A DNA stretch of 32,000 nucleotides from assembly GCA_000002455.1 (NCBI GenBank), contig DQ158858.1, positions 1-32,000 of the forward strand, read 5' to 3'. The notes beneath the pieces are model-generated. The model made no database searches, was not told the DNA's origin, and worked only from the letters and a program-made list of their open reading frames with translations. A program made the position numbers and the translations under genes. Position 1 is the first letter of the stretch. Every line of letters starts with the position of its first letter. The DNA is from Bigelowiella natans nucleomorph. Its lineage: Eukaryota > Protista > Cercozoa. Below are positions 14,324-31,608 of this stretch, piece by piece.

Positions 14324-15807
14324 TTAAATAAGTAGACTATCAAATAAGTCAACAAAATCATATTTTTTTATTTTTCGTTTGTAAAAAGCATAATACATTT
14401 TGAATAAGTTTTTAAAAGCGGAAGATTTGTTACAATTTGGTAGTTTGATAGATTTCAACATGAAGTTATAAAAACTAGAAAAGTAGGATATTATTTTCTT
14501 TTTTATTTTTAATTTCTTAGATAACATTTTATTTTTTTTAAATAAATCGTAAAACTCTTTGACATTCTCGTTTCTTATAAAAGATATGCAAATGCCATAA
14601 TTGTTTAAGCTAATTTTATCAATTGTAACCGTGAAAGTCTTCCAATTTGTTTTAAAAAACAAAATTTTGAAAAAAGATTAAAATGAACCAATAACCATTT
14701 TGCGTGCCATAGATCTATACCATGATAAGAAGTATCATCTAAAATTAAAATTGAATTATGTGAGGCAATAAAAGAATTAATATTGTATATTTTATTCTTA
14801 AAATTCATTTTCTTTGTCAATCGAAAGAGCGGCTTATCCAGGAGTAGCCTAGTGAAGCATTGTTCTAGTACAAATGCCTAAAAATACAAATTTACTTGAT
14901 ATGAAAATTGCATAATGACTATAATATTCCCTTCAATAATATTCAAAACTAATACAACGATAAACCATACCAGCTCTGAAGGACTGTAAGTGACATAATA
15001 TTTACAGATATTCACCGATACTATATTTTCGGTTTTTAAACTGATTGCGATTAAATTAGAATAAATTTGAGAAATTCTTAATATCTTAGTCTTGATTGGT
15101 TTGAGTAAAGTTGAGCAAGTAAATATATTTTGCTTACAGTTATGAAATTTGTCATAAAAACCCTCGATTTTATGATTAGAATTATGATCTAAAAAAATAT
15201 CAAATTCGTCATAGACTAACATCTTTATTTTAATACAAAACTTTGATGTATATGTTTTCAGGAATTTTAATACTTTTATATTTATTTGATAAAGAAAAAA
15301 CAACATATTTTGATAAATTTTTTTTTTCTAGATCTTCATTTATCAAAAGAATGCTACGTTTAAAAATGTTAGAACCACTTACAAGTGTTTTGTAAACGAG
15401 CATAGATTGTAAGCATAGTTCAAAAGTAGGAGAGAATATTAGGGTTAACGAGTTATAAATCGATATTAAAAAATCTTTTGATATAGATTCTAATATCTAA
15501 AACAAAGATTTCATACCGGTATCATGATTAATAATGTTTTACCAGTACCAGGCTTGGAGTTTATCAAAATACTACTTCCAGCTAAAAGATAAGGCAGACT
15601 TAGTCTTTGAATACTAGTCATTCGAACAAAATTGTTTTGATTTAAAATTAATTTTGTTGATTTAGTCAAGGGCATTTGTTCAAAATTATTTATAATATTA
15701 AGATAAATTTTTGTTGATATTAGTTCTTGCGAAAAAACTAGCATATATCTTATCTGTTTTTTTATCGTTAGATATTTTTTTATTTTTGAAAACAGATGGA
15801 CACTCAT
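14324..15807 (-). CDS. Divergent DEAD-box RNA helicase (tentatively Dbp4/Has1-like); start approximate
   Basis: Q motif FVRMTSIQ, motif I KPGTGKT, Ia SPTFELCLQ, II DEFD, III CST, V GIDL, VI QIGRLSR, joined across short introns. Confidence 0.85.
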
Positions 15808-23348: not shown

Positions 23349-23854
23349 TCATAATTTATAAATAGAGGGAATAAAATGTAGTTTATACAGCAAGATTAGT
23401 AGATATTTTAGTTCCTATCTAATAGTAATTTACGATATAGAGTTTTGAAAATTTTTGAAGACCATATGGATCTCTACTATAGAAAGACTTATAAAAAGGA
23501 ATAAGATTTGAAGACTTGAATGAAAAATGTCTATTTCTATATAGTATCTCTAGTTCTTGAAAACCAGTTTTATCGTTTCTTATCCAAGATTTGTCTGTTT
23601 CCCTCAGAATCTTATTTAATTTTTTTTTACTTCATGATATATTATTATATGGCTGATGATATTCATCAATAAAGAACAAGTTTTTATTTTCTTAAGATTC
23701 AAATTTGAAGACTTTCCAGATGAGTAATTAAAATAGTTTATCTAAGTTGTTATACATTTACTTCTCCCTCTGAATTAAGCTCTATTTCTTCTATTTCTTT
23801 TGAGACTGATCCTAAGAAAAGGCTGCTAATTCGTAAATAATTTAAGCTTTCCAT
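23349..23854 (-). CDS. mago: Mago nashi (EJC core), 148 aa, introns 23742-23761, 23611-23630, 23415-23433
   Basis: Spliced: YLRISSLFLGSVSKEIEEIELNSEGEINYFNYS...EILRETDKSWIRNDKTGFQELEILYRNRHFSFKSS...SRDPYGLQKFSKLYIELKYLLILLYKLHF. Collinear with Mago EILKEDD.NWP.PDRVG.QELEI...HISF.TSK...S.DPEGLR.FYYLVQDLK...LHF. Confidence 0.9.
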
Positions 23855-23914
23855 AAGCTAGTTTTAGTAGTAGTTTAAGATACCAATAATAAGAATTGTT
23901 ATAAACTTAAATTA

Positions 23915-24341
23915 ATGAGTAGTACTTCAAAAAATGTTGGAATACCATTAAAATTGATTCATCAAGCCGAAAAGCATCAAATTTCCGTTAGAATTTATTA
24001 ATTAGGTTAAATTAAAAGATGGAAAATTATTGATTGGAGAATTAATGAATAGTGAGGATAACTGGAATTTATGTCTTAAAAAGGTCATCATAAAAGAAAA
24101 AGTATTAATTTCATAATCTAGGAAAATAAAAGTTCCAAATCAATGCTTTATTTTGTTAGGGGAAATCAGATTACATTTATAATTATTCCTGAAATTTTAA
24201 AATATTCACCTTTATTTTATGAGCTTAGATTGAAAATGACTGTTAAATTTATTATTTTAGAAAAATATACCAAGTGGTCTAGGAATCGTAGGCAGATCTG
24301 GAGCAGCAAACTCGATAATAAAATCAACACAATGGAAGTGA
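23915..24341 (+). CDS. snrpD3: Spliceosomal Sm protein D3, 122 aa, 3 introns
   Basis: Spliced: GIPLKLIHQAE...GELMNSEDNWN...VRGNQITFIIIPEILKYSPLF. Confidence 0.93.
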
Positions 24342-24385
24342 TAATACACAAATCAATTAAAAGAAGACTATATTTCTAAATAATT

Positions 24386-25270
24386 ATGAGAAGAGTAAAT
24401 GCTTTTTCAAAGTCTATATCTAGCGAAAAAGTTTTAGATAATATAAATAAAGTAATTGCAATTTAATTTAGTTAAAAATAAGCGACTTATCAATAATATT
24501 AAAGTCTAATAATACAAAGATTGTAGAAAACTTAAACTTAACTGTGAATCCTGGTGAAATACATGTTTTAATGGGAAGAAATGGATCTGGTAAATCTACT
24601 CTGTCTAAAACGATCGTCGGTCATCCATCATACGAAGTAATAGATGGATCTATTACTTATAAAAATATAGACATAACACAAATTGATGCTAGTTTAAGAG
24701 CATTGAACGGTATATTTATGTGTTTTCAAAGTCCAGTTGAAATTCAGGGTGTTAAAAACCTAGATTTTTTGAGAAAGATTAGCAATTCACGTAGAAAATT
24801 CCTATCTCAGCCTATTTTCGATCCTCTCGATTTTTATAGTTTTATCAGTGACAAAGTTATTTATGTTTTTATAGATTGAGTCCGTAGGACTTGATAATAC
24901 TTTTTTGACAAGAAATGTCAATGAGGGATTTTCGGGAGGAGAAAAGAAAAGAAATGAGATGCTCCAATTAATAACAGTTCAAGTATAATTAAGAAAGTAT
25001 AGGCGGACTTTTGCATATTTGACGAAATTGATTCAGGTTTAGATATCGATTCAATAAAAAATCTTGTGGACATTATTTCAACTTTAAGGAATAGAGGAGT
25101 TGGAATGATAATTATTACTCATTATAATGTATTTTGAAAATTAAAAGAAACTAATAGATTTGGTTAGACCAGATTATGTTCATATATTAAAAAATGGAAA
25201 AATAATAAAATCAGGAGATATGGAGTTGTCAAAAATAATCGAGAGGGAAGGTTTTGATGCTATCAATTAA
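24386..25270 (+). CDS. sufC: SufC (Ycf16) Fe-S assembly ABC ATPase, probably plastid-targeted; about 4 introns
   Basis: [17 protein letters not shown]; GHPSYEV; [10 protein letters not shown]; [16 protein letters not shown]; [10 protein letters not shown]; ITHY; RPDYVHI. Confidence 0.95.
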
Positions 25271-25483
25271 AATATTCTTTTTCTGTTGTAAATTATTCAA
25301 AAATGAATTTTAACTTATTAAATTAAGTATCTTGAGACTTTATAATTAAGTAATTTTTCAAAAAGCTGATTGTAAATTAACTTCTTTACAATACGTACAA
25401 CATTGCTTAAAGCAGGATCTTAATTTTTTTGGAACCATAATTATTTTAAAATATTAAAATTTCTTAGTCATTAGTTTTATAAA

Positions 25484-26832
25484 TCATAAGAAATCTATAA
25501 TTTTGAAAGATTTGAGAACGTCATTCTTAAGATAAGTATCTGTAGAGGATTTAATTAAAGAAATTGAAATACCTTTTTTATTTAATCTTCCTACTCTTCC
25601 TATCTAGTAAAAATCTAAATACTCTATTTGTTAAATTAGAAAAGTAACTTTTTCCTTGATTTGTACTACCCAGATAAATCAAAATTTATTACAATATCTA
25701 CTTGTTCAAAGTCTAATCCTCTGGAAAGTAAATCCGTTCCAATGAGTATCATTTTATCAATTTGAGAGAATTTTTTTAATATTCTTAATCTATAAGAGTT
25801 TTAAGAACCTAAATGATTGTTTCAATCTGGAATGAATACAGTATGATTTAATATTGTTATTATTTAAAATTTCGTTCAAAGCTCTGGCTCTACTTATAGA
25901 ACTGGTAAATATTATTACCTTAAACAATAAAAAATACTTTATTATAGTTGAGATTACGCAACATTAAGAATAACAAATAAAGATCATTATTATTATTTGT
26001 AGAAATTGAATAATTAATTGAATTGGGAACAGTACTAGTTTTGGAATCGTTAATATAAACTTCAAACGCCATTTTCTAATATTAATAAATAGTACTGTAA
26101 GGTTTTTACAAACTAATTTGGTTTGAATACTCATAGTAGTTGACATTAAAATGACTTGCTTATTAGAATGAGTTTCTTCAAATATCTTTATCAAAATTTT
26201 AAATAATTCTTTACATATTAAGTAACTTTGAGATTCTATAATATGATCGCATTCATCGATAGCTAAAAAATTTACAAAATTTAATAATACTTTCTTTGTT
26301 CTTACTTGCTGTAATTAAGAAATTTACTTGGTAAAGTCTGCCTAATGTGGAAACTATCAATTTAGGAGTTATTTTTCGAATTTTTCTTGCTTGATTGTCA
26401 AATGGAGTTCCGCCAATTAAACAAAAGATTTTTAAAGATTCTTCGTTCTGAGATAATTTTTTAAAAATCCAAAATATCTTTATATTCATTGAGAACTTGA
26501 ATTGCTAATTCCCGTGTGGGAGCTATTGAAAGTGCTTGTACAGTATTAAAAGACTCGTTTATTTGTTCAATAAAAGCAACAACGTATATCAATGTTTTTC
26601 CGATACCAGGTCTTCCTTGACAAATAATATCACAGTTGCTTACGGCATGAACAAGAGTCAGGAGCTGAACTATTTTAAAGAAGAAACTTTCCGTTAATAA
26701 ATTGTAGTTATATTTAATTAAATTATTTCGTAAAACTTTTTTTTTAATTATTTGCTTGAATGAAATATTTGAAAAAAGTTCTGAACTTTGGTAAAATTTT
26801 TTATCTATATTGCCTGAGTTTTGGCATTCCAT
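25484..26832 (-). CDS. uap56: DECD-box RNA helicase UAP56/Sub2-like, many short introns
   Basis: GRPGIGKT; APTRELAIQ; GG; STLGRL; motif II IDECD; STT; TDLLSRGLDFEQVDIVINFD; IGRVGR. Confidence 0.85.
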
Positions 26833-26917
26833 TGTTATAATCTTTATTACAATGATTATAACAAGTTTTACTCATCATATATTTTCATAAATACGTAACT
26901 TAATTTTATTTAAGATC

Positions 26918-28613
26918 TTAATTAGATGTAACTATAAAATCATCTATTCGTAATATAAAATTTAAAAATTCTTTACAATGGTAATTGATAGAGTATTTTG
27001 ACAAACTAATATCAAATATACCGAATTTTGCCATATTACAAATTCTTTCATCGTTAATGTTGAAACCATAATAATTTAAATTTTTAGAATGTAATAGTAA
27101 GAGAATTTTAATATTTGATATAAACTCATTGTTTCGATTTGTGACGATAAATTTTATAAAATGATAGAAAGCTGTAATATAAATTCTTAGAACTAAATTG
27201 TATAACTTACCCTATAAAATAAAAATATACCACACTCGAATATTTTAAAGTATATAATTGTTTGCTTAACATGGTAAGAATACAAAGTTCAAAAGCGGAG
27301 CCCCCAGGTATGACAAAGGGATATTTAAAAATTGTTTTTACTATAGTTATGATATTTAGCAAAAAACAATTTATAAAACTGTTAGTGAAATTGTGTAGTA
27401 TTAAGAGACTATAATTATGACTTTTCCTAGAATTATGTATTAAGAATATGGTATTTTTGTTATTCTTTATGAAAATATAATACTTTAAAGGCAGATGCCT
27501 TATCAAAAAAGTATAAGTCAAATGAATTTTCTTTATTGTTCTTTTGAAGTTCAGATGAAAGATAATTTTGCACTTTAACCAATTTCGCATGCTCAATGTT
27601 ATAGATTAATTTTATACCATGATAATACTAATTTTAAAAGTAATTACGAATAAAGACAAAAATGTATTTATGTTTTTGTTATCAATATTGAATGACTCTA
27701 GTAAGATAATATCGCAGTTTTGTGATTTCAGATGAATAAGTAATTTTCTTAGATGAAATGATTCTTGATAATATAAATTAAGTAGATAATCTTTATTCTT
27801 TACGATGTCCTTTGTAAAAAATTTTTTTTTAACAAGATCTTTAAAATTCGAATCCAATAATATCTTTTTTTTAGTTGTCGTAAAAGAAGTTGGCAAAGAT
27901 ACACAATTATTGCTTATTAAACATGTTCCTTTGTACATTTTAGTTTTTAATCTAGTTTTTTTTTTAAGTATTATAAAGGAAATTTTTGTTTTTAGAGCAC
28001 TTTTTAAAATAACAAAACTTTTCTTGTTTAAAACAAAAGGCTAAATAAACTAGCATGAATTTTTGTAATAAATCGTTTTTTAAAGTGGCTAGTGGCATAT
28101 GTTTACCGATACTTTTATAAAGAATAAAACTTTTCCAAAATTAGTAGGAGACATCTAAAGTTTGACAAATTCAATACGCATGACAACTTTCTAAGATTCT
28201 ATCGATAATACTATTTACTTTAGATATTAGATGAAATATTAAAGATGTAAAATACTTTAAGCTAGTCCATAAAATTGAATTTCTCATAAAGTTTTGCATT
28301 TTAGACATAATATAGCATAATAAAAATATTAAACTTTTTTTGCCATCGAAACTAAATCTGTTCTAGTTAATGCAAGAGAACATGACTATTCATAAAAGTA
28401 CGAAATATTAGACAAATTGGGTTATTTAATTTCAAAACATGTGATAAAGGATTATTTGATCTAGAAAAGCATAATTTTGTTTTATTGATAAACAACTTTT
28501 ATTTAATTTTTTACCATTGTTTTTTTTGAACTTGGTCCCAAGGAGTTAGTTATTAATTTTTTAAGAAATATTGATTCCCATATTAATAGCTTTGTATGAA
28601 GTGAAAACAGCAT
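26918..28613 (-). CDS. Chaperonin CCT/TCP-1 subunit (delta-like, tentative), highly divergent, multiple introns; start approximate
   Basis: NSLGPSSKKTM resembles SLGPKGMDKM; LKSQNCDIILLES resembles KATGCNVLLIQKS; VIPGGSAFEL; C-terminal FILRIDDFIV. Confidence 0.82.
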
Positions 28614-28656
28614 TATTTAGATAATATCTAATAAATTAGTAAAAAAAGTACATTAT

Positions 28657-28944
28657 TTAGCTGAAAAGATAGATAATCTCGCTTCCCCTAAGTACCATTA
28701 ATCCTAAAACTCTTCTTATTTCTTGACTCTATTAAAAAAAAGTTAAACGTCTTTTTTATCATTAATATACTCCTCTACATCAGATAATACCAAATTCATA
28801 AATTTATCATATGCTAATAATCTATAGAATTTTTTATACCTTCCGTTGATTCTATCATAGTTTTTTGTTACTATATTTATCCCTATTTATGCTTATGGTA
28901 CTTTTATTAATATACTTTTTAAGACTGATAGTCGAATTCACCAT
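28657..28944 (-). CDS. Sm-fold protein, most like the SmB core (76 aa, 3 introns)
   Basis: Spliced: ...GRLLAYDKFMNLVLSDVEEY...EIRRVLGLMVLRGSEIIYLFS. An LSm7/8 identity is not excluded. Not in the ORF track. Confidence 0.85.
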
Positions 28945-28981
28945 AAATTAGCTAACTTTCTATAATTGTTATTAAAATGTT

Positions 28982-29449
28982 ATGGATTTTACAGTCCTAG
29001 CTCCAATTAGTCCATTCTATACAAATACCAAAACTGTAATGATTTAAAAAATAGCATAAAAAAGCACCGAAAGCGACAACTTTATATAATAATCATACCT
29101 TTATTTTAGAAATACTAATTTTTATTATGAATAAGGTATCTTTTTCAAATGTAGATCAAAGAAGGGAGTAATTTCAATTCTAACAAGTTTTTTGTAAATG
29201 CACCTACAAAGTATTACAAAGCCAATATGTATAAAAAAGTAAATACGATAATATTAGGAAAGTAAAAAGTACCATTCATCTTGGACAATTCGCTTTAATC
29301 ATATTAATAAGGCAAGAAAGATTAAGCACACGAATCCCAGGATATCCTCGCAAGAAATAAGATATAGCGTTTCTAGTTTAGTGTATACTTCAAAAAAGAA
29401 GACAATGTGCTGTTTAATTAATGTTCTAAAAAATATTTATTTACAATAA
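28982..29449 (+). CDS. Hypothetical protein (about 136 aa, three 19-nt introns)
   Basis: Open frame from ATG 28982 after removing gtaatgatttaaaaaatag, gtatctttttcaaatgtag and gtaaatacgataatattag. Confidence 0.55.
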
Positions 29450-29586
29450 TATTAACTGAAAAAGTTTAATTTACTCGAAAATGATTATTTTTTATAATTA
29501 TAATTAAAATTCTATCAGAGAATAGTTTAGTTTATAGTTTTCTAGCATTAATTAGATTTTAAATGTGTTGTATAATTATAATACAT

Positions 29587-31307
29587 ATGAGCCTTGAGGT
29601 ATTTAAGTTATTAAGCTATCGAAATAATATTATTCTTGATAGAAAGGAAATTGTAATTATTACTATAATAGAAAGTTGAATATACAAACTTAAAAAAAAC
29701 ACCTGTTAGTAAAGAAATATAAATTTTTATAGAATGAATTTAAAAATCTTTTTACTTCTAAATTTCCCCTACACTCGACTCTATTTTTAAATATTCATAG
29801 AATTAGCTATAAGGTATTATGAAAAAATATAGTTCGGTGGTACGAAAATGCTTATTGATATCTTTATATATAATAATAAAAATAGCTACATAAAGATAGA
29901 ATCTAGAAATAAATTATTAAAAGTCTGATTTTTGTTTAGAGAATAAAGAAATACTTATATTAGATATTAAAAAGCGAAGAACATTAAAGCAAAAAAAAAA
30001 TCAACTAAAATCAAAGTTTGGCACAAAAAAGTTTCAGGGATAATTTGTTAACTAAATAAGTTATGTTTTAAATTAACTGATATGTATTATGATGGTATAG
30101 TAATTTTGCAACTTAAAAAACTACCTATCCAGCAGATAAAAAATTCAAAGAAGAATAATAAATTCATAAGCAATGTATGTTAAAAATTTAATAATAGTAA
30201 ATCTATATTCATGTTTTTGTAAGGAAAAGTCTTCGTTAAGTAAACTCAATGATAAAATAAATTTTCTAGAAATAAAAAAATCTAAATTTTCAAATAATAT
30301 TGTCCTATCTTTAAAAAAGCAAGATAATTCCTTCTCTAATTTTCTTTTATTGATAAAATTAATAAGTACACATTATTTTTTCATCGAAAAAAGTAAGCAA
30401 TCTGATTTATGTATCATAATTTTGCTTTCTAATAGATTTCTTATTAAAATACTGGTAAAGGAACTAATACTTTTAGTATTATGATATGTGTTTTAAATTT
30501 TAACTATGAGATGTTACTTATTAAAATTATAAGAGTGAAGTTTGGTTAATGAAATCCATTTCGTGTAAAACAACGAAAAGTGCTTTAATGATGGCAATTT
30601 TTTGAAATTTAAAAAACATTTAATAATATCTTTCTTTTAAAATTACTATAACTTTAAAAAAGGTATGGGCTTGTACTTTATTTAAGGTGTGTGCAAGCAT
30701 TTTAAATGAGCATTTTAAACTTTTTGGATTCTTCAGAAAATTGTTCCTACATTTAGAGCGACAAAAAACTAAGCACTATAAATTTTTATTTACAATATAA
30801 TTATTTTTGAATATCATTATATTATTATGTTTAATTTTATTTTTACAATAAGAACAGTTGTCCTTGACCATATGGTATCAATATAAAATAAAAATACTTT
30901 TAGAAAGATTACTAATGAATTTTAAATTAGATAATATCATTAAGGTAAATCTTTATCTATCTGAATATTTTATTAGATGTATCAATAATAGATTATTTTA
31001 CTCTATTGAAAATAAGATTATAAGAAAATCCCTATTAATCAAAAAAAAATATAATTACAGAAGAAATGGTTTAACTAATGTGAATCGACCTGAAGAAATA
31101 TTTACTAATATCAAATTAAGTATGTTCGGATTAGCTCTTAAGGAAAAAAAATTAAATTTAGTATTACGGAAAATTGAATTTATGATATATTTAATAAAAA
31201 AAACAAAATTTAATGATTTTTACTATTTTGAGAAGAAGAACTTTATTATCTTTTTAAATTTACAAAGTAAGCTTCTTCATTATTTAAATTCTGAATATGT
31301 GCTATAA
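29587..31307 (+). CDS. Large divergent hypothetical protein(s), intron-rich; exon structure not fully resolved
   Basis: Plus-strand ORFs 30173-30484 and 30858-31307 plus candidate 18-20 nt GT-AG introns. No confidently recognisable motif. Confidence 0.4.
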
Positions 31308-31341
31308 CTTTTTAATTATGTAATTATTTTGCTTTATAATT

Positions 31342-31608
31342 ATGGAACCATTGAGATCATCAAAAGGCTGGATTTTGATATATAAAGGCATGTCTTTTAA
31401 TCTAATGAATTATATAATAAAAATGTTCTTAAACTTAAAAGATCAAGAAAAATTAGACATATACCTACCAAATAAAGAGTTTTTTCCTATTAAGAATTTT
31501 GGTTTTATCGTAACCAATTCCCTTTCAAATAGTCTATTACTAATAAATCTAAATGGTCTGATAATTAAGGGGAAAGAAATCCGTATTGAATGGGTTTTCC
31601 TGAAATAG
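31342..31608 (+). CDS. y14: Y14/RBM8 (Tsunagi), EJC core RRM protein, 88 aa, intronless
   Basis: EPLRSSKGWILI resembles GPQRSVEGWILF, and LNGLIIKGKEIRIEWVF resembles LNGQDLMGQPISVDWCF. These are the two Y14-diagnostic ends of the RRM. Confidence 0.85.
   Translation: MEPLRSSKGWILIYKGMSFNLMNYIIKMFLNLKDQEKLDIYLPNKEFFPIKNFGFIVTNSLSNSLLLINLNGLIIKGKEIRIEWVFLK

What the first reader, a model, noticed from the sequence alone, without database searches (positions are those of the whole stretch)
23349..31608. Candidate nucleomorph exon junction complex: divergent Mago + minimal Y14 + UAP56
Seen: a 148-aa Mago-like gene appears only after removing three 19-20 nt introns and is absent from the ORF track. 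About 7.5 kb away is an 88-aa RRM with Y14-specific termini, and a DECD helicase (UAP56-like) lies between them. Known: Mago and Y14 form an obligate heterodimer that locks eIF4AIII about 24 nt upstream of exon junctions, and both are normally extremely conserved. Inference: this miniaturised nucleus keeps an EJC/mRNA-export (possibly NMD) module for transcripts with many tiny introns, and both partners have co-diverged strongly. I cannot tell from here whether these genes are already annotated.
Basis: partly seen in the sequence, partly recalled or inferred. Interest (0 to 1): 0.85.

Follow-up and report, generated by a model that had tools for sequence, protein, structure and literature searches.

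The report
Nucleomorph Mago, unrecognised Y14, UAP56 helicase
In the tiny relict nucleus (nucleomorph) of the alga Bigelowiella natans, the already-annotated Mago gene has a likely partner, an 88-residue Y14 that the public record holds only as a truncated 61-residue product, so the core pair of the exon junction complex probably survives in the smallest known nucleus.

Summary
The window is the first 32 kb of the 98,136-bp chromosome of a 372,870-bp, three-chromosome genome, and the deposited protein names it as the Bigelowiella natans nucleomorph.

- **Mago.** The four-exon, 148-aa model is exactly the deposited protein "Mago (nucleomorph) [Bigelowiella natans]" (ABA27360.1). It is already known, and a published nucleomorph gene list includes it. 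cDNA contigs lack precisely the three 19-20 nt introns. The protein is about 32% identical to canonical Mago proteins, which are about 77% identical to each other, and its model still has the Mago fold.
- **Helicase.** The DECD helicase is a clear UAP56/Sub2 orthologue (150.7 bits against 92.5 for eIF4A-I).
- **Y14 candidate.** The 88-aa ORF is transcribed and under strong purifying selection (pN/pS about 0.08). Its best match among solved structures is Y14, end to end, but weakly (E 0.31). It is predicted to bind nucleomorph Mago (score 0.70, best control 0.01). The interface is the RRM sheet against Mago's two long helices, which I recall to be the canonical arrangement. Pfam RRM_1 does not detect it. 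NCBI holds only a 61-aa truncated product here.

Not supported: a physical gene "module", and NMD. No PYM, Btz, UPF3 or UPF1-type helicase was found, at low sensitivity. The single eIF4A-family gene cannot be assigned to eIF4AIII. A CWC22-type MA3 domain is present.

The parts
23349..23854 (-). Mago nashi gene: four exons, 148 aa, identical to the deposited 'Mago (nucleomorph) [Bigelowiella natans]'
   Evidence: Exon translations equal P0015. P0015 is named by NCBI and UniRef. Pfam Mago_nashi: exon 3 alone E 1e-8; the full-length orthologue P0010 scores 1.5e-19 over profile positions 10-137 of 142. The AF2 model has pLDDT 85.7. Foldseek against human Magoh 1p27_A gives TM 0.88, and all nine significant hits are Mago.
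23742..23761 (-). Mago intron 1, 20 nt, GT..AG
   Evidence: Absent from cDNA contigs L012, L013 and L014.
23611..23630 (-). Mago intron 2, 20 nt, GT..AG
   Evidence: Absent from cDNA contigs L012-L014.
23415..23433 (-). Mago intron 3, 19 nt, GT..AG
   Evidence: Absent from cDNA contigs L012-L014. The aligner places the gap at 23414-23432, a one-base ambiguity.
25484..26832 (-). UAP56/Sub2 (DDX39-type) DECD-box helicase with at least eight 18-20 nt introns. The 3' end coordinate is approximate.
   Evidence: The spliced cDNA L012:1-876 (292 aa) scores 150.7 bits against Sub2, 136 against DDX39B, and 92.5 against the next family, eIF4A-I. Pfam finds DEAD plus Helicase_C. The DECD motif is visible. 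cDNA confirms introns at 26309-26327, 26209-26226, 26076-26095, about 25916-25936, 25790-25808 and 25604-25622. The introns at 26670-26687 and 26478-26496 were read from the sequence only.
31342..31608 (+). 88-aa RRM-only protein, the likely Y14/RBM8A orthologue and partner of Mago
   Evidence: - Transcribed: cDNA contigs L009-L011.
- Selected: against a relative (L015), 27 synonymous and 8 non-synonymous codon differences, pN/pS 0.08; the first 27 codons alone show 7 synonymous and 1 non-synonymous.
- Best solved-structure match is Drosophila Y14 1oo0_B, end to end, E 0.31. 10 of the 20 hits are Y14/RBM8A and 4 more are other RRM proteins.
- Protein-atlas features point to RRM (0.90).
- Predicted complex with P0015: 0.70 against a best control of 0.01, partner pLDDT at least 78.
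- Against: no Pfam RRM_1 hit.

Best explanation
The window is one end of the 98-kb Bigelowiella natans nucleomorph chromosome. It carries three separate housekeeping genes of post-splicing mRNA handling.

1. A genuine but extremely divergent Mago, already annotated.
2. A UAP56/Sub2 DECD-box helicase.
3. An 88-residue protein that is only an RRM. It is the nucleomorph's Y14.

Mago and Y14 form a heterodimer in which Mago's two long helices cover the RNP1/RNP2 face and the C-terminal strand of the Y14 RRM. I recall this to be the canonical arrangement.

The rest is inferred, not shown. After removal of the roughly 950 pygmy introns, the dimer locks an eIF4A-family helicase onto the mRNA. That helicase is the one nucleomorph gene at G000:C1 about 111.1-112.3 kb, or an imported host protein. 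A nucleomorph-encoded CWC22-type protein helps load it. UAP56 then packages the mRNP for exit to the periplastidial compartment.

The three genes are not a linked module. Their closeness reflects how densely the genome is packed.
For: Genome identity:
- 372,870 bp in 3 contigs of 140,590, 134,144 and 98,136 bp.
- An rDNA operon and U6 snRNA lie at the window's start.
- The deposited name of P0015 gives the organism.

Mago:
- The exon translations equal the deposited protein.
- Splicing is shown by cDNA.
- Pfam and solved-structure matches are collinear over the full length.
- The fold matches Magoh at TM 0.88.

UAP56:
- A 58-bit margin over the next helicase family, plus the DECD motif.

Y14:
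- The ORF is transcribed.
- pN/pS is 0.08.
- Y14 is the first-ranked solved-structure match, aligned end to end.
- KNFGFIVT reads like an RNP1 motif, and GWIL and EWVF sit at the two termini.
- No other RRM in the genome looks like Y14. The RRM_1 hits lie at four other loci; the one read through (C3:33523-33705) resembles the RRM of PPIL4-type cyclophilins by eye.

Predicted complex:
- ipSAE 0.70 against a best control of 0.01.
- The tool's calibration: 51 of 78 solved complexes and 2 of 108 mismatched pairs reached the mark.
- The runs agree in at least 79% of contacts, and partner pLDDT is at least 78.
- The interface is Mago 50-66 and 124-144, that is helices 54-67 and 116-141 of the model, against Y14 4-15, 41-57 and 81-88.

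Context:
- A CWC22-type MA3 domain lies at G000:C3:79943-80143.
- 'cwc22', 'eif4A' and 'mago' are in the published gene list.
- B. natans nucleomorph introns are spliced at over 90% (PMC6009652).
Against: - Pfam RRM_1 gives no hit for the 88-aa protein, even at E 10.
- Its match to Y14 is not significant on its own (E 0.31).
- AF2 on the single sequence gave pLDDT 49.
- No orthologue was found outside Bigelowiella.
- Mago-Y14 complexes are solved, so the complex pass may be model memory. It shows likeness to Mago-Y14, not binding.
- No other nucleomorph RRM could be run as a control, because only one job was allowed.
- The eIF4A-family gene is not assignable to eIF4AIII. Exon 1 favours eIF4A-I by 10.5 bits; exons 2 and 3 favour eIF4A-III by 11 and 4.8 bits.
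- No Btz, PYM, UPF3 or UPF1-type domain is encoded in the nucleomorph.
- Mago has lost 48 of the 84 columns that are at least 90% conserved in canonical Mago. Binding to eIF4AIII may therefore be altered.
Confidence: 0.72

Rival explanations
1. The 88-aa ORF is a real, conserved RRM protein of some other family, or a lineage-specific one, and not Y14. Mago's partner is then imported from the host, or Mago works without one.
For: No Pfam RRM_1 hit. The Y14 match has E 0.31, with CIRBP, RBM3 and TIA-1 close behind. Protein-atlas hits are generic RRM clusters. The complex predictor may favour any RRM placed beside Mago because of solved Mago-Y14 structures (caveat).
Against: Y14 entries take 10 of the 20 solved-structure hits, including rank 1, and align end to end with both terminal Trp motifs. 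The complex scores 0.70 against 0.01. In the tool's calibration, distant cousins of a true partner never reached the mark (0 of 84). From my own knowledge, Mago and Y14 occur together as an obligate pair.
Confidence: 0.13
2. Mago and Y14 pair, but they do not build a canonical exon junction complex. The dimer has a different or reduced role, for example in splicing fidelity or mRNP export, without a clamped eIF4AIII. A paper title and abstract report that trypanosomes lack a canonical EJC (PMC11888146).
For: No unambiguous eIF4AIII. No Btz, PYM or UPF3. Mago has lost more than half of its otherwise near-invariant residues, including most of the conserved N-terminal sheet motif. The trypanosome precedent appears in the title and abstract listed.
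Against: The genome is intron-rich: 951 introns (PMC4035089), spliced at over 90%. It keeps a CWC22-type gene and one eIF4A-family helicase whose two largest exons score higher against eIF4A-III. Imported host factors were not searchable here.
Confidence: 0.3
3. Mago, the helicase and the RRM gene form a co-regulated or co-inherited gene cluster, a genomic 'module'.
For: All three lie within 8.3 kb, and long multi-gene cDNA contigs cross gene borders.
Against: At least six unrelated genes lie between and around them: an Sm-like gene, an ABC ATPase, a region a first-stage note (unchecked) calls a CCT subunit, unassigned ORFs, and a gene first-stage notes (unchecked) call NOP2. The genes sit on both strands. 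RNA-processing genes make up a large share of the published list of nucleomorph genes, so proximity is expected by chance. The other candidate EJC parts are far away, at C1:111 kb and C3:80 kb.
Confidence: 0.05

Closest known systems
Mago nashi / MAGOH (Pfam PF02792), as in human 1P27 and Drosophila 1OO0
   Same: Same length and collinear, with no indels (residues 7-142 against 6-141 of MAGOH). Same fold (TM 0.88, rmsd 1.8 A). 23 alignment columns are invariant, including the GxQELE motif.
   Different: Only about 32% identical to the canonical consensus, while canonical Mago proteins average 77% (minimum 67%). It keeps only 36 of the 84 near-invariant columns. Composition is shifted towards I, L, S and Y.
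Y14 / RBM8A (RRM subunit of the exon junction complex core)
   Same: End-to-end alignment to the Y14 RRM, sharing GWIL before strand 1 and the W-x-F motif after the last strand. Predicted to bind Mago's helices through the RNP face of its sheet.
   Different: 88 aa against the 165-aa Drosophila chain listed; from my knowledge, about 174 aa in human. It is the RRM only and lacks the N-terminal region and the C-terminal RS/RG tail (my knowledge). About 26% identical to Drosophila Y14 over the RRM, counted from the alignment. Not detected by Pfam RRM_1.
UAP56 / DDX39B / yeast Sub2 (TREX helicase)
   Same: DECD motif II. Best and clearly separated match to Sub2 and DDX39B over 270-283 residues.
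   Different: Degenerate motifs, compared with canonical forms recalled from memory: GRPGIGKT for motif I and STT for SAT. It has an insertion before motif VI. It is interrupted by at least eight 18-20 nt introns. The reference sequence carries one extra G at 25669 relative to cDNA.
Exon junction complex core (eIF4AIII-Mago-Y14-MLN51, loaded by CWC22)
   Same: The nucleomorph genome encodes candidates for Mago, Y14, one eIF4A-family helicase and a CWC22-type MA3 protein.
   Different: No MLN51/Btz, PYM or UPF3 was detected. The helicase is not clearly eIF4AIII. Assembly is untested.

Membership tests
Mago nashi (PF02792) | Significant full-length match to the family profile | tested here: met
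   Exon 3 alone: E 1e-8, 35.7 bits, above the cut-off of 27. The natural full-length orthologue P0010: E 1.5e-19, profile 10-137 of 142. P0015 carries a precomputed PF02792 hit.
Mago nashi (PF02792) | Mago fold: a flat antiparallel sheet with two long helices on one face | tested here: met
   AF2 model pLDDT 85.7, pTM 0.81. All nine significant Foldseek hits are Mago chains; the best is 1p27_A at TM 0.88.
Mago nashi (PF02792) | Forms a heterodimer with Y14 through its helical face | tested here: met
   In silico only: ipSAE 0.70 against a best control of 0.01. The interface is on helices 54-67 and 116-141. Physical binding was not tested.
Y14 / RBM8A | RRM domain with RNP1 and RNP2 | tested here: inconclusive
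   No Pfam RRM_1 hit at E up to 10. However, 14 of 20 weak solved-structure hits are RRM proteins aligned over the whole domain. Protein-atlas features score 0.90 for RRM. KNFGFIVT reads as RNP1. Partner pLDDT is 78-80 within the complex, against 49 alone.
Y14 / RBM8A | Closer to Y14 than to other RRM families | tested here: inconclusive
   Y14 ranks first among solved structures and takes 10 of the 20 hits. But E is 0.31, and the margin over CIRBP is only about 1 bit. No Y14-specific profile was available.
Y14 / RBM8A | Binds Mago with the RNP face of the sheet | tested here: met
   In silico only. Interface residues are 4-15 (strand 1), 41-57 (including F53, F55 and V57 of RNP1) and 81-88. 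Score 0.70 against 0.01.
UAP56 / Sub2 (DDX39) | DECD in place of DEAD in motif II | tested here: met
   AIDECDH appears in the exon translation and in the cDNA.
UAP56 / Sub2 (DDX39) | Best match to Sub2/DDX39, clearly separated from other DEAD-box families | tested here: met
   150.7 bits (Sub2) and 136 bits (DDX39B) against 92.5 bits (eIF4A-I). An exon-level search with the DECD exon returned almost only Sub2 and DDX39: its top 14 hits.
Exon junction complex | An eIF4AIII orthologue is present | tested here: inconclusive
   There is one eIF4A-family gene (L003). Exon 1: eIF4A-I 39.5 against eIF4A-III 29 bits. Exon 2: 102.2 against 113.2. Exon 3: 82.2 against 87. No tree could be built.
Exon junction complex | CWC22 loader present | tested here: inconclusive
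   MA3 domain hit at G000:C3:79943-80143, E 1.6e-11. 'cwc22' is in the published list. The MIF4G domain, which binds eIF4AIII (my knowledge), was not detected.
Exon junction complex | MLN51/Btz, PYM and UPF3 partners | tested here: not met
   No hits in the nucleomorph genome at E up to 10. Sensitivity is low for split, divergent genes, and imported host proteins could not be searched.
Exon junction complex | Splicing-dependent deposition about 24 nt upstream of junctions | not testable with these tools
   This needs CLIP or RIP on nucleomorph transcripts.

The most novel reading that the evidence does not exclude
The smallest known nucleus runs a stripped-down exon junction complex made of a 148-aa Mago, an RRM-only 88-aa Y14 and its single eIF4A-family helicase. 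That helicase would then serve both as translation factor eIF4A and as the EJC clamp eIF4AIII. There would be no Btz, PYM or UPF3, and the Mago-Y14 interface would have been rebuilt on both sides.
Probability: 0.2. Interest if true: 0.65.

Novelty: new member of a known kind. Interest (0 to 1): 0.4.

Why it matters
Mago in this genome has been known since the genome was deposited. A helicase gene also appears in the published list, though I could not tell under which name.

What may be new is the recognition of its partner. NCBI holds only a 61-aa product that lacks the first strand of the RRM and has no domain hit. The searchable nucleomorph literature lists 'mago' but never Y14 or an exon junction complex.

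If the pair is real, it gives a minimal, naturally pared-down Mago-Y14 with a heavily substituted interface. Such a pair would help define what the heterodimer truly needs. It would also make one question testable: does an intron-rich but extremely reduced nucleus still mark its exon junctions?

It is a modest gain for nucleomorph and EJC specialists, not a new kind of system.

Tried and rejected
**Joined spliced model.** Exons were searched one by one by reference. For whole proteins I used natural records: the deposited protein P0015, the MMETSP protein P0010, and cDNA loci L012-L014.

**Y14 candidate, searches that gave nothing:**
- Pfam on the 88-aa ORF and on its relative P0012: no family.
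- The search for homologous proteins with the 88-aa ORF: only itself and its close variants.
- AF2 on the single sequence: pLDDT 49, too poor for a fold search.
- No canonical Y14 sequence could be obtained by reference. So I could not run a Y14-specific profile or a profile-profile test.

**Public collections:**
- An exon-3 DNA pattern in metagenome contigs: no match.
- The search for related loci with the Y14 alignment: 326 pattern matches, none confirmed.

**Reads:**
- The look-up of sequencing runs listed 20 holders, none on record as RNA.
- Read laying placed nothing from two presumed RNA runs and only fragments from a third. The one well-covered run (X18) is collinear with the genome. 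The read test of splicing therefore failed, and cDNA contigs were used instead.

**Assignments that stayed open:**
- eIF4AIII: exon-wise comparison with solved eIF4A-I and eIF4A-III gave conflicting signs. No sequences were available for a tree.
- The MIF4G search was blank although cwc22 is annotated. Blanks for PYM, Btz, UPF3 and AAA_12 are therefore weak evidence of absence.
- The name NCBI gives the 61-aa product is withheld by the tools. I cannot say whether it is 'hypothetical' or one of the listed 'rnabp' genes.

**Rejected:** the RRM at C3:33523-33705 as an alternative Y14. By eye it resembles the RRM of PPIL4-type cyclophilins.

Full report
**Where the window comes from.** The window is G000:C3:1-32000. 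The genome has 372,870 bp in three contigs of 140,590, 134,144 and 98,136 bp. The window starts with an 18S-5.8S-28S rDNA unit followed by U6 snRNA and three tRNAs. It then drops to about 24% G+C. A deposited protein encoded on the 98,136-bp contig is named "Mago (nucleomorph) [Bigelowiella natans]". This is therefore one end of the smallest B. natans nucleomorph chromosome, a published and annotated genome.

| Part | Coordinates | Size |
|---|---|---|
| Exon 1 | 23854-23762 | 31 aa |
| Intron 1 | 23761-23742 | 20 nt |
| Exon 2 | 23741-23631 | 37 aa |
| Intron 2 | 23630-23611 | 20 nt |
| Exon 3 | 23610-23434 | 59 aa |
| Intron 3 | 23433-23415 | 19 nt |
| Exon 4 | 23414-23349 (with stop) | 21 aa |

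All three introns are GT..AG, and the total is 148 aa.

- Exon 3 alone passes Pfam Mago_nashi (E 1e-8, 35.7 bits, cut-off 27). It also matches human MAGOH among solved structures (E 3.6e-5).
- A whole-library search with exon 3 and cluster look-ups returned two natural full-length proteins.
- P0015 is 148 aa (NCBI ABA27360.1 / XP_001712972.1, UniProt Q3LW06, also in MMETSP). Its sequence is the four exon translations in order.
- P0010 is 149 aa, from a transcript of a close relative, 88% identical, with the same three junctions.
- Three cDNA contigs that encode P0015 (L012-L014) lack exactly 23742-23761, 23611-23630 and 23414/5-23432/3. They show 1 mismatch over about 3.2 kb.
- The introns are thus spliced as predicted, and the model equals the public annotation.
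- 'mago' is also in the published nucleomorph gene list for L. oceanica and B. natans (PMC4035089, Additional file 1).

**How divergent Mago is.**
- P0010 matches the Pfam profile over positions 10-137 of 142 (E 1.5e-19). It matches MAGOH collinearly, 7-142 against 6-141.
- In an alignment with 50 canonical Mago proteins (A1), the nucleomorph protein is 27-34% identical to them. It is 32% identical to their consensus.
- The canonical proteins average 77% identity to each other, with a minimum of 67%.
- The nucleomorph protein keeps 36 of the 84 columns that are at least 90% conserved in the canonical set.
- The AF2 model is nevertheless confident (pLDDT 85.7, pTM 0.81). Its only significant structural matches are Mago chains, the best being 1p27_A at TM 0.88 and rmsd 1.8 A.

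**The helicase.**
- The minus-strand gene at about 25484-26832 is split by many 18-20 nt introns.
- cDNA L012 gives a natural spliced reading of its last 292 residues. It confirms introns at 26309-26327, 26209-26226, 26076-26095, about 25916-25936, 25790-25808 and 25604-25622.
- That protein scores 150.7 bits against yeast Sub2 and 136 against human DDX39B/UAP56. The next family, eIF4A-I, scores 92.5.
- Motif II reads DECD. It is a UAP56/Sub2 orthologue.
- Two further 5' introns, 26670-26687 and 26478-26496, are read from the sequence only.

**The 88-aa ORF (31342-31608, +).** Sequence evidence alone is weak.
- Pfam finds nothing, even at E 10. The six-frame RRM_1 scan of the genome does not pick it up.
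- Against solved structures, however, the best hit is Drosophila Y14 (1oo0_B). It aligns from residue 3 to 88 of the query, with E 0.31.
- 10 of the 20 hits are Y14/RBM8A chains, and 4 more are other RRM proteins.
- The alignment pairs GWIL with GWIL, KNFGFIVT with the RNP1 octamer KGYALVEY, LNG with LNG, and IEWVF with VDWCF.
- Protein-language-model features and the Atlas's own model also point to an RRM.

Three further lines of evidence support it.

1. *It is transcribed.* cDNA contigs L009-L011 cover it. In L010, eight intron-sized gaps elsewhere in the contig show that the contig is cDNA.

2. *It is under strong purifying selection.*
   - Against the orthologue in a relative (L015), 35 codons differ: 27 synonymously and 8 not (pS 0.54, pN 0.042, ratio 0.08).
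   - The first 27 codons show 7 synonymous changes and 1 non-synonymous change.
   - NCBI holds only a 61-aa product starting at Met28 (P0002). That product would lack strand 1 with RNP2.
   - The selection pattern, and the 88-91-aa products called on transcripts (P0013, P0012), favour the long form.

3. *It is predicted to bind Mago.*
   - The complex of P0015 with the 88-aa protein passes the test: ipSAE 0.70 against a best control of 0.01.
   - By the tool's calibration, the mark was reached by 51 of 78 solved complexes and 2 of 108 mismatched pairs.
   - The runs agree in at least 79% of contacts, and partner pLDDT is at least 78.
   - The interface is Mago 50-66 and 124-144, against Y14 residues 4-15, 41-57 (F53, F55 and V57 of RNP1) and 81-88. 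The Mago segments are the two long helices of the AF2 model (H54-67, H116-141).
   - That is the arrangement I recall from the solved Mago-Y14 complexes, in which Mago's helices cover the RNP face of the RRM.
   - Because such complexes are solved, the pass may be model memory. It shows likeness to Mago-Y14, not that this copy binds.
   - For assigning identity, likeness is what matters. In the tool's calibration, distant cousins of a true partner never passed (0 of 84).
   - I could not run a second nucleomorph RRM as a control, because only one job was allowed.

No other RRM in the genome looks like Y14. RRM_1 hits lie at four other loci. The one I read through, C3:33523-33705, resembles the RRM of PPIL4-type cyclophilins by eye.

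I put the Y14 assignment at about 0.8-0.85.

**Is there an exon junction complex?** The nucleomorph genome holds one eIF4A-family gene (G000:C1 about 111.1-112.3 kb, locus L003).

| Exon of the eIF4A-family gene | eIF4A-I (bits) | eIF4A-III (bits) |
|---|---|---|
| Exon 1 (80 aa) | 39.5 | 29 |
| Exon 2 (143 aa) | 102.2 | 113.2 |
| Exon 3 (96 aa) | 82.2 | 87 |

- The net difference is about 5 bits in favour of eIF4A-III, which does not resolve the question.
- A CWC22-type MA3 domain lies at G000:C3:79943-80143 (E 1.6e-11). 'cwc22' is in the published list. The MIF4G scan was blank, which shows how insensitive these six-frame scans are here.
- No PYM (Mago-bind), Btz, UPF3 or UPF1-type (AAA_12) domain was found.
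- The host nuclear genome is not in G000 and could not be searched.
- The Mago-Y14 dimer is therefore supported. An EJC is plausible in an intron-rich genome (951 introns in PMC4035089; over 90% spliced in PMC6009652), but it is inferred. NMD has no support.

**Not a module.**
- Several unrelated genes lie between Mago and Y14, on both strands.
- They include an Sm-like gene (LSM hit), an ABC ATPase that the published list would call ycf16 (my reading), a region a first-stage note (unchecked) calls a CCT subunit, and unassigned ORFs.
- The other EJC candidates are on another chromosome or 50 kb away.
- RNA-processing genes make up a large share of the published gene list. Three within 8 kb is therefore unremarkable.

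**Co-divergence.**
- Both proteins are far from their canonical relatives, and the predicted interface of Mago is no better conserved than the rest.
- 25% of the predicted contact residues match the canonical consensus; in the interface segments the figure is 26%, against 34% elsewhere.
- This fits a rebuilt interface. It equally fits the general fast, AT-biased divergence I expect of this genome. No specific co-evolution signal was tested.

**Novelty.**
- Mago is already known.
- UAP56 is presumably annotated as a helicase, but I could not see its name.
- Y14 is not named in the gene list. It is not named in any nucleomorph paper in the searchable library.
- The deposited product is truncated and has no domain hit. 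Its name is withheld by the tools, so an 'rnabp' label cannot be excluded.
- Another first-stage note in this scan (s1-534126) raised the same Y14 idea on an overlapping window.
- Overall this is a new member of a known kind, of moderate interest.

**Failed or blank steps.**
- The RNA-read test gave nothing usable.
- Two metagenome scans were blank.
- No canonical Y14 sequence could be brought in by reference, so no Y14-specific profile test was possible.

Noticed in passing
window 31342-31608 (+): NCBI, UniRef and nr hold only a 61-aa product here, starting at Met28 (P0002). The 27 upstream codons differ from a relative by 7 synonymous changes and 1 non-synonymous change. Transcript-based calls give 88-91 aa. 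The deposited coding sequence looks truncated at its 5' end.
   Followed up: yes
window 25669: The window has one extra G (GGG rather than GG on the minus strand) inside the UAP56 gene, relative to cDNA L012 and to the contig of a DNA-like public run (X18). As written, it puts a stop after ...NFDLSG. This is either a reference sequencing error or a strain difference.
   Followed up: partly
window 26209-26226 and 26670-26687 (-): Two 18-nt introns lie in the helicase gene and do not change the reading frame. The first is removed in cDNA, taking out SYLICE and rebuilding a Lys codon. The second, in the Q-motif region, is stop-free in frame and was not covered by cDNA.
   Followed up: partly
G000:C1:111100-112340 (+), locus L003: This is the only eIF4A-family gene of the nucleomorph. 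It has several motifs that I recall as eIF4A-III-like (NKxFK, YRYL, IFCNT, GLxIPxVSL, AINF), but an eIF4A-I-like first exon. Published lists call it eif4A.
   Followed up: partly
window 23916-24154 (+): A small Sm/LSM-like gene lies head to head with Mago, about 60 nt away. cDNA confirms two introns: 23987-24005 in L012-L014 and 24102-24121 in L014 only. L013 appears to keep the second intron.
   Followed up: partly
window 15166-15618 (-): A further DEAD-domain match (33.9 bits) is crossed by nine stop codons in the six-frame reading. It is either a heavily intron-split helicase gene or a decayed one.
   Followed up: no
L009-L014 (JGI cDNA contigs): cDNA contigs of 2-3.4 kb run across three to five neighbouring genes on both strands, with introns of both strands removed. 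This fits long overlapping or multi-gene nucleomorph transcripts, or it is an assembly merger of overlapping transcripts.
   Followed up: no
L002 287-691 (-) = G000:C1 about 98586-98990: A 134-aa ORF next to a DEAD-box gene carries what looks by eye like a GYF-type motif (WYYKD...GP...W..G). It was not tested.
   Followed up: no
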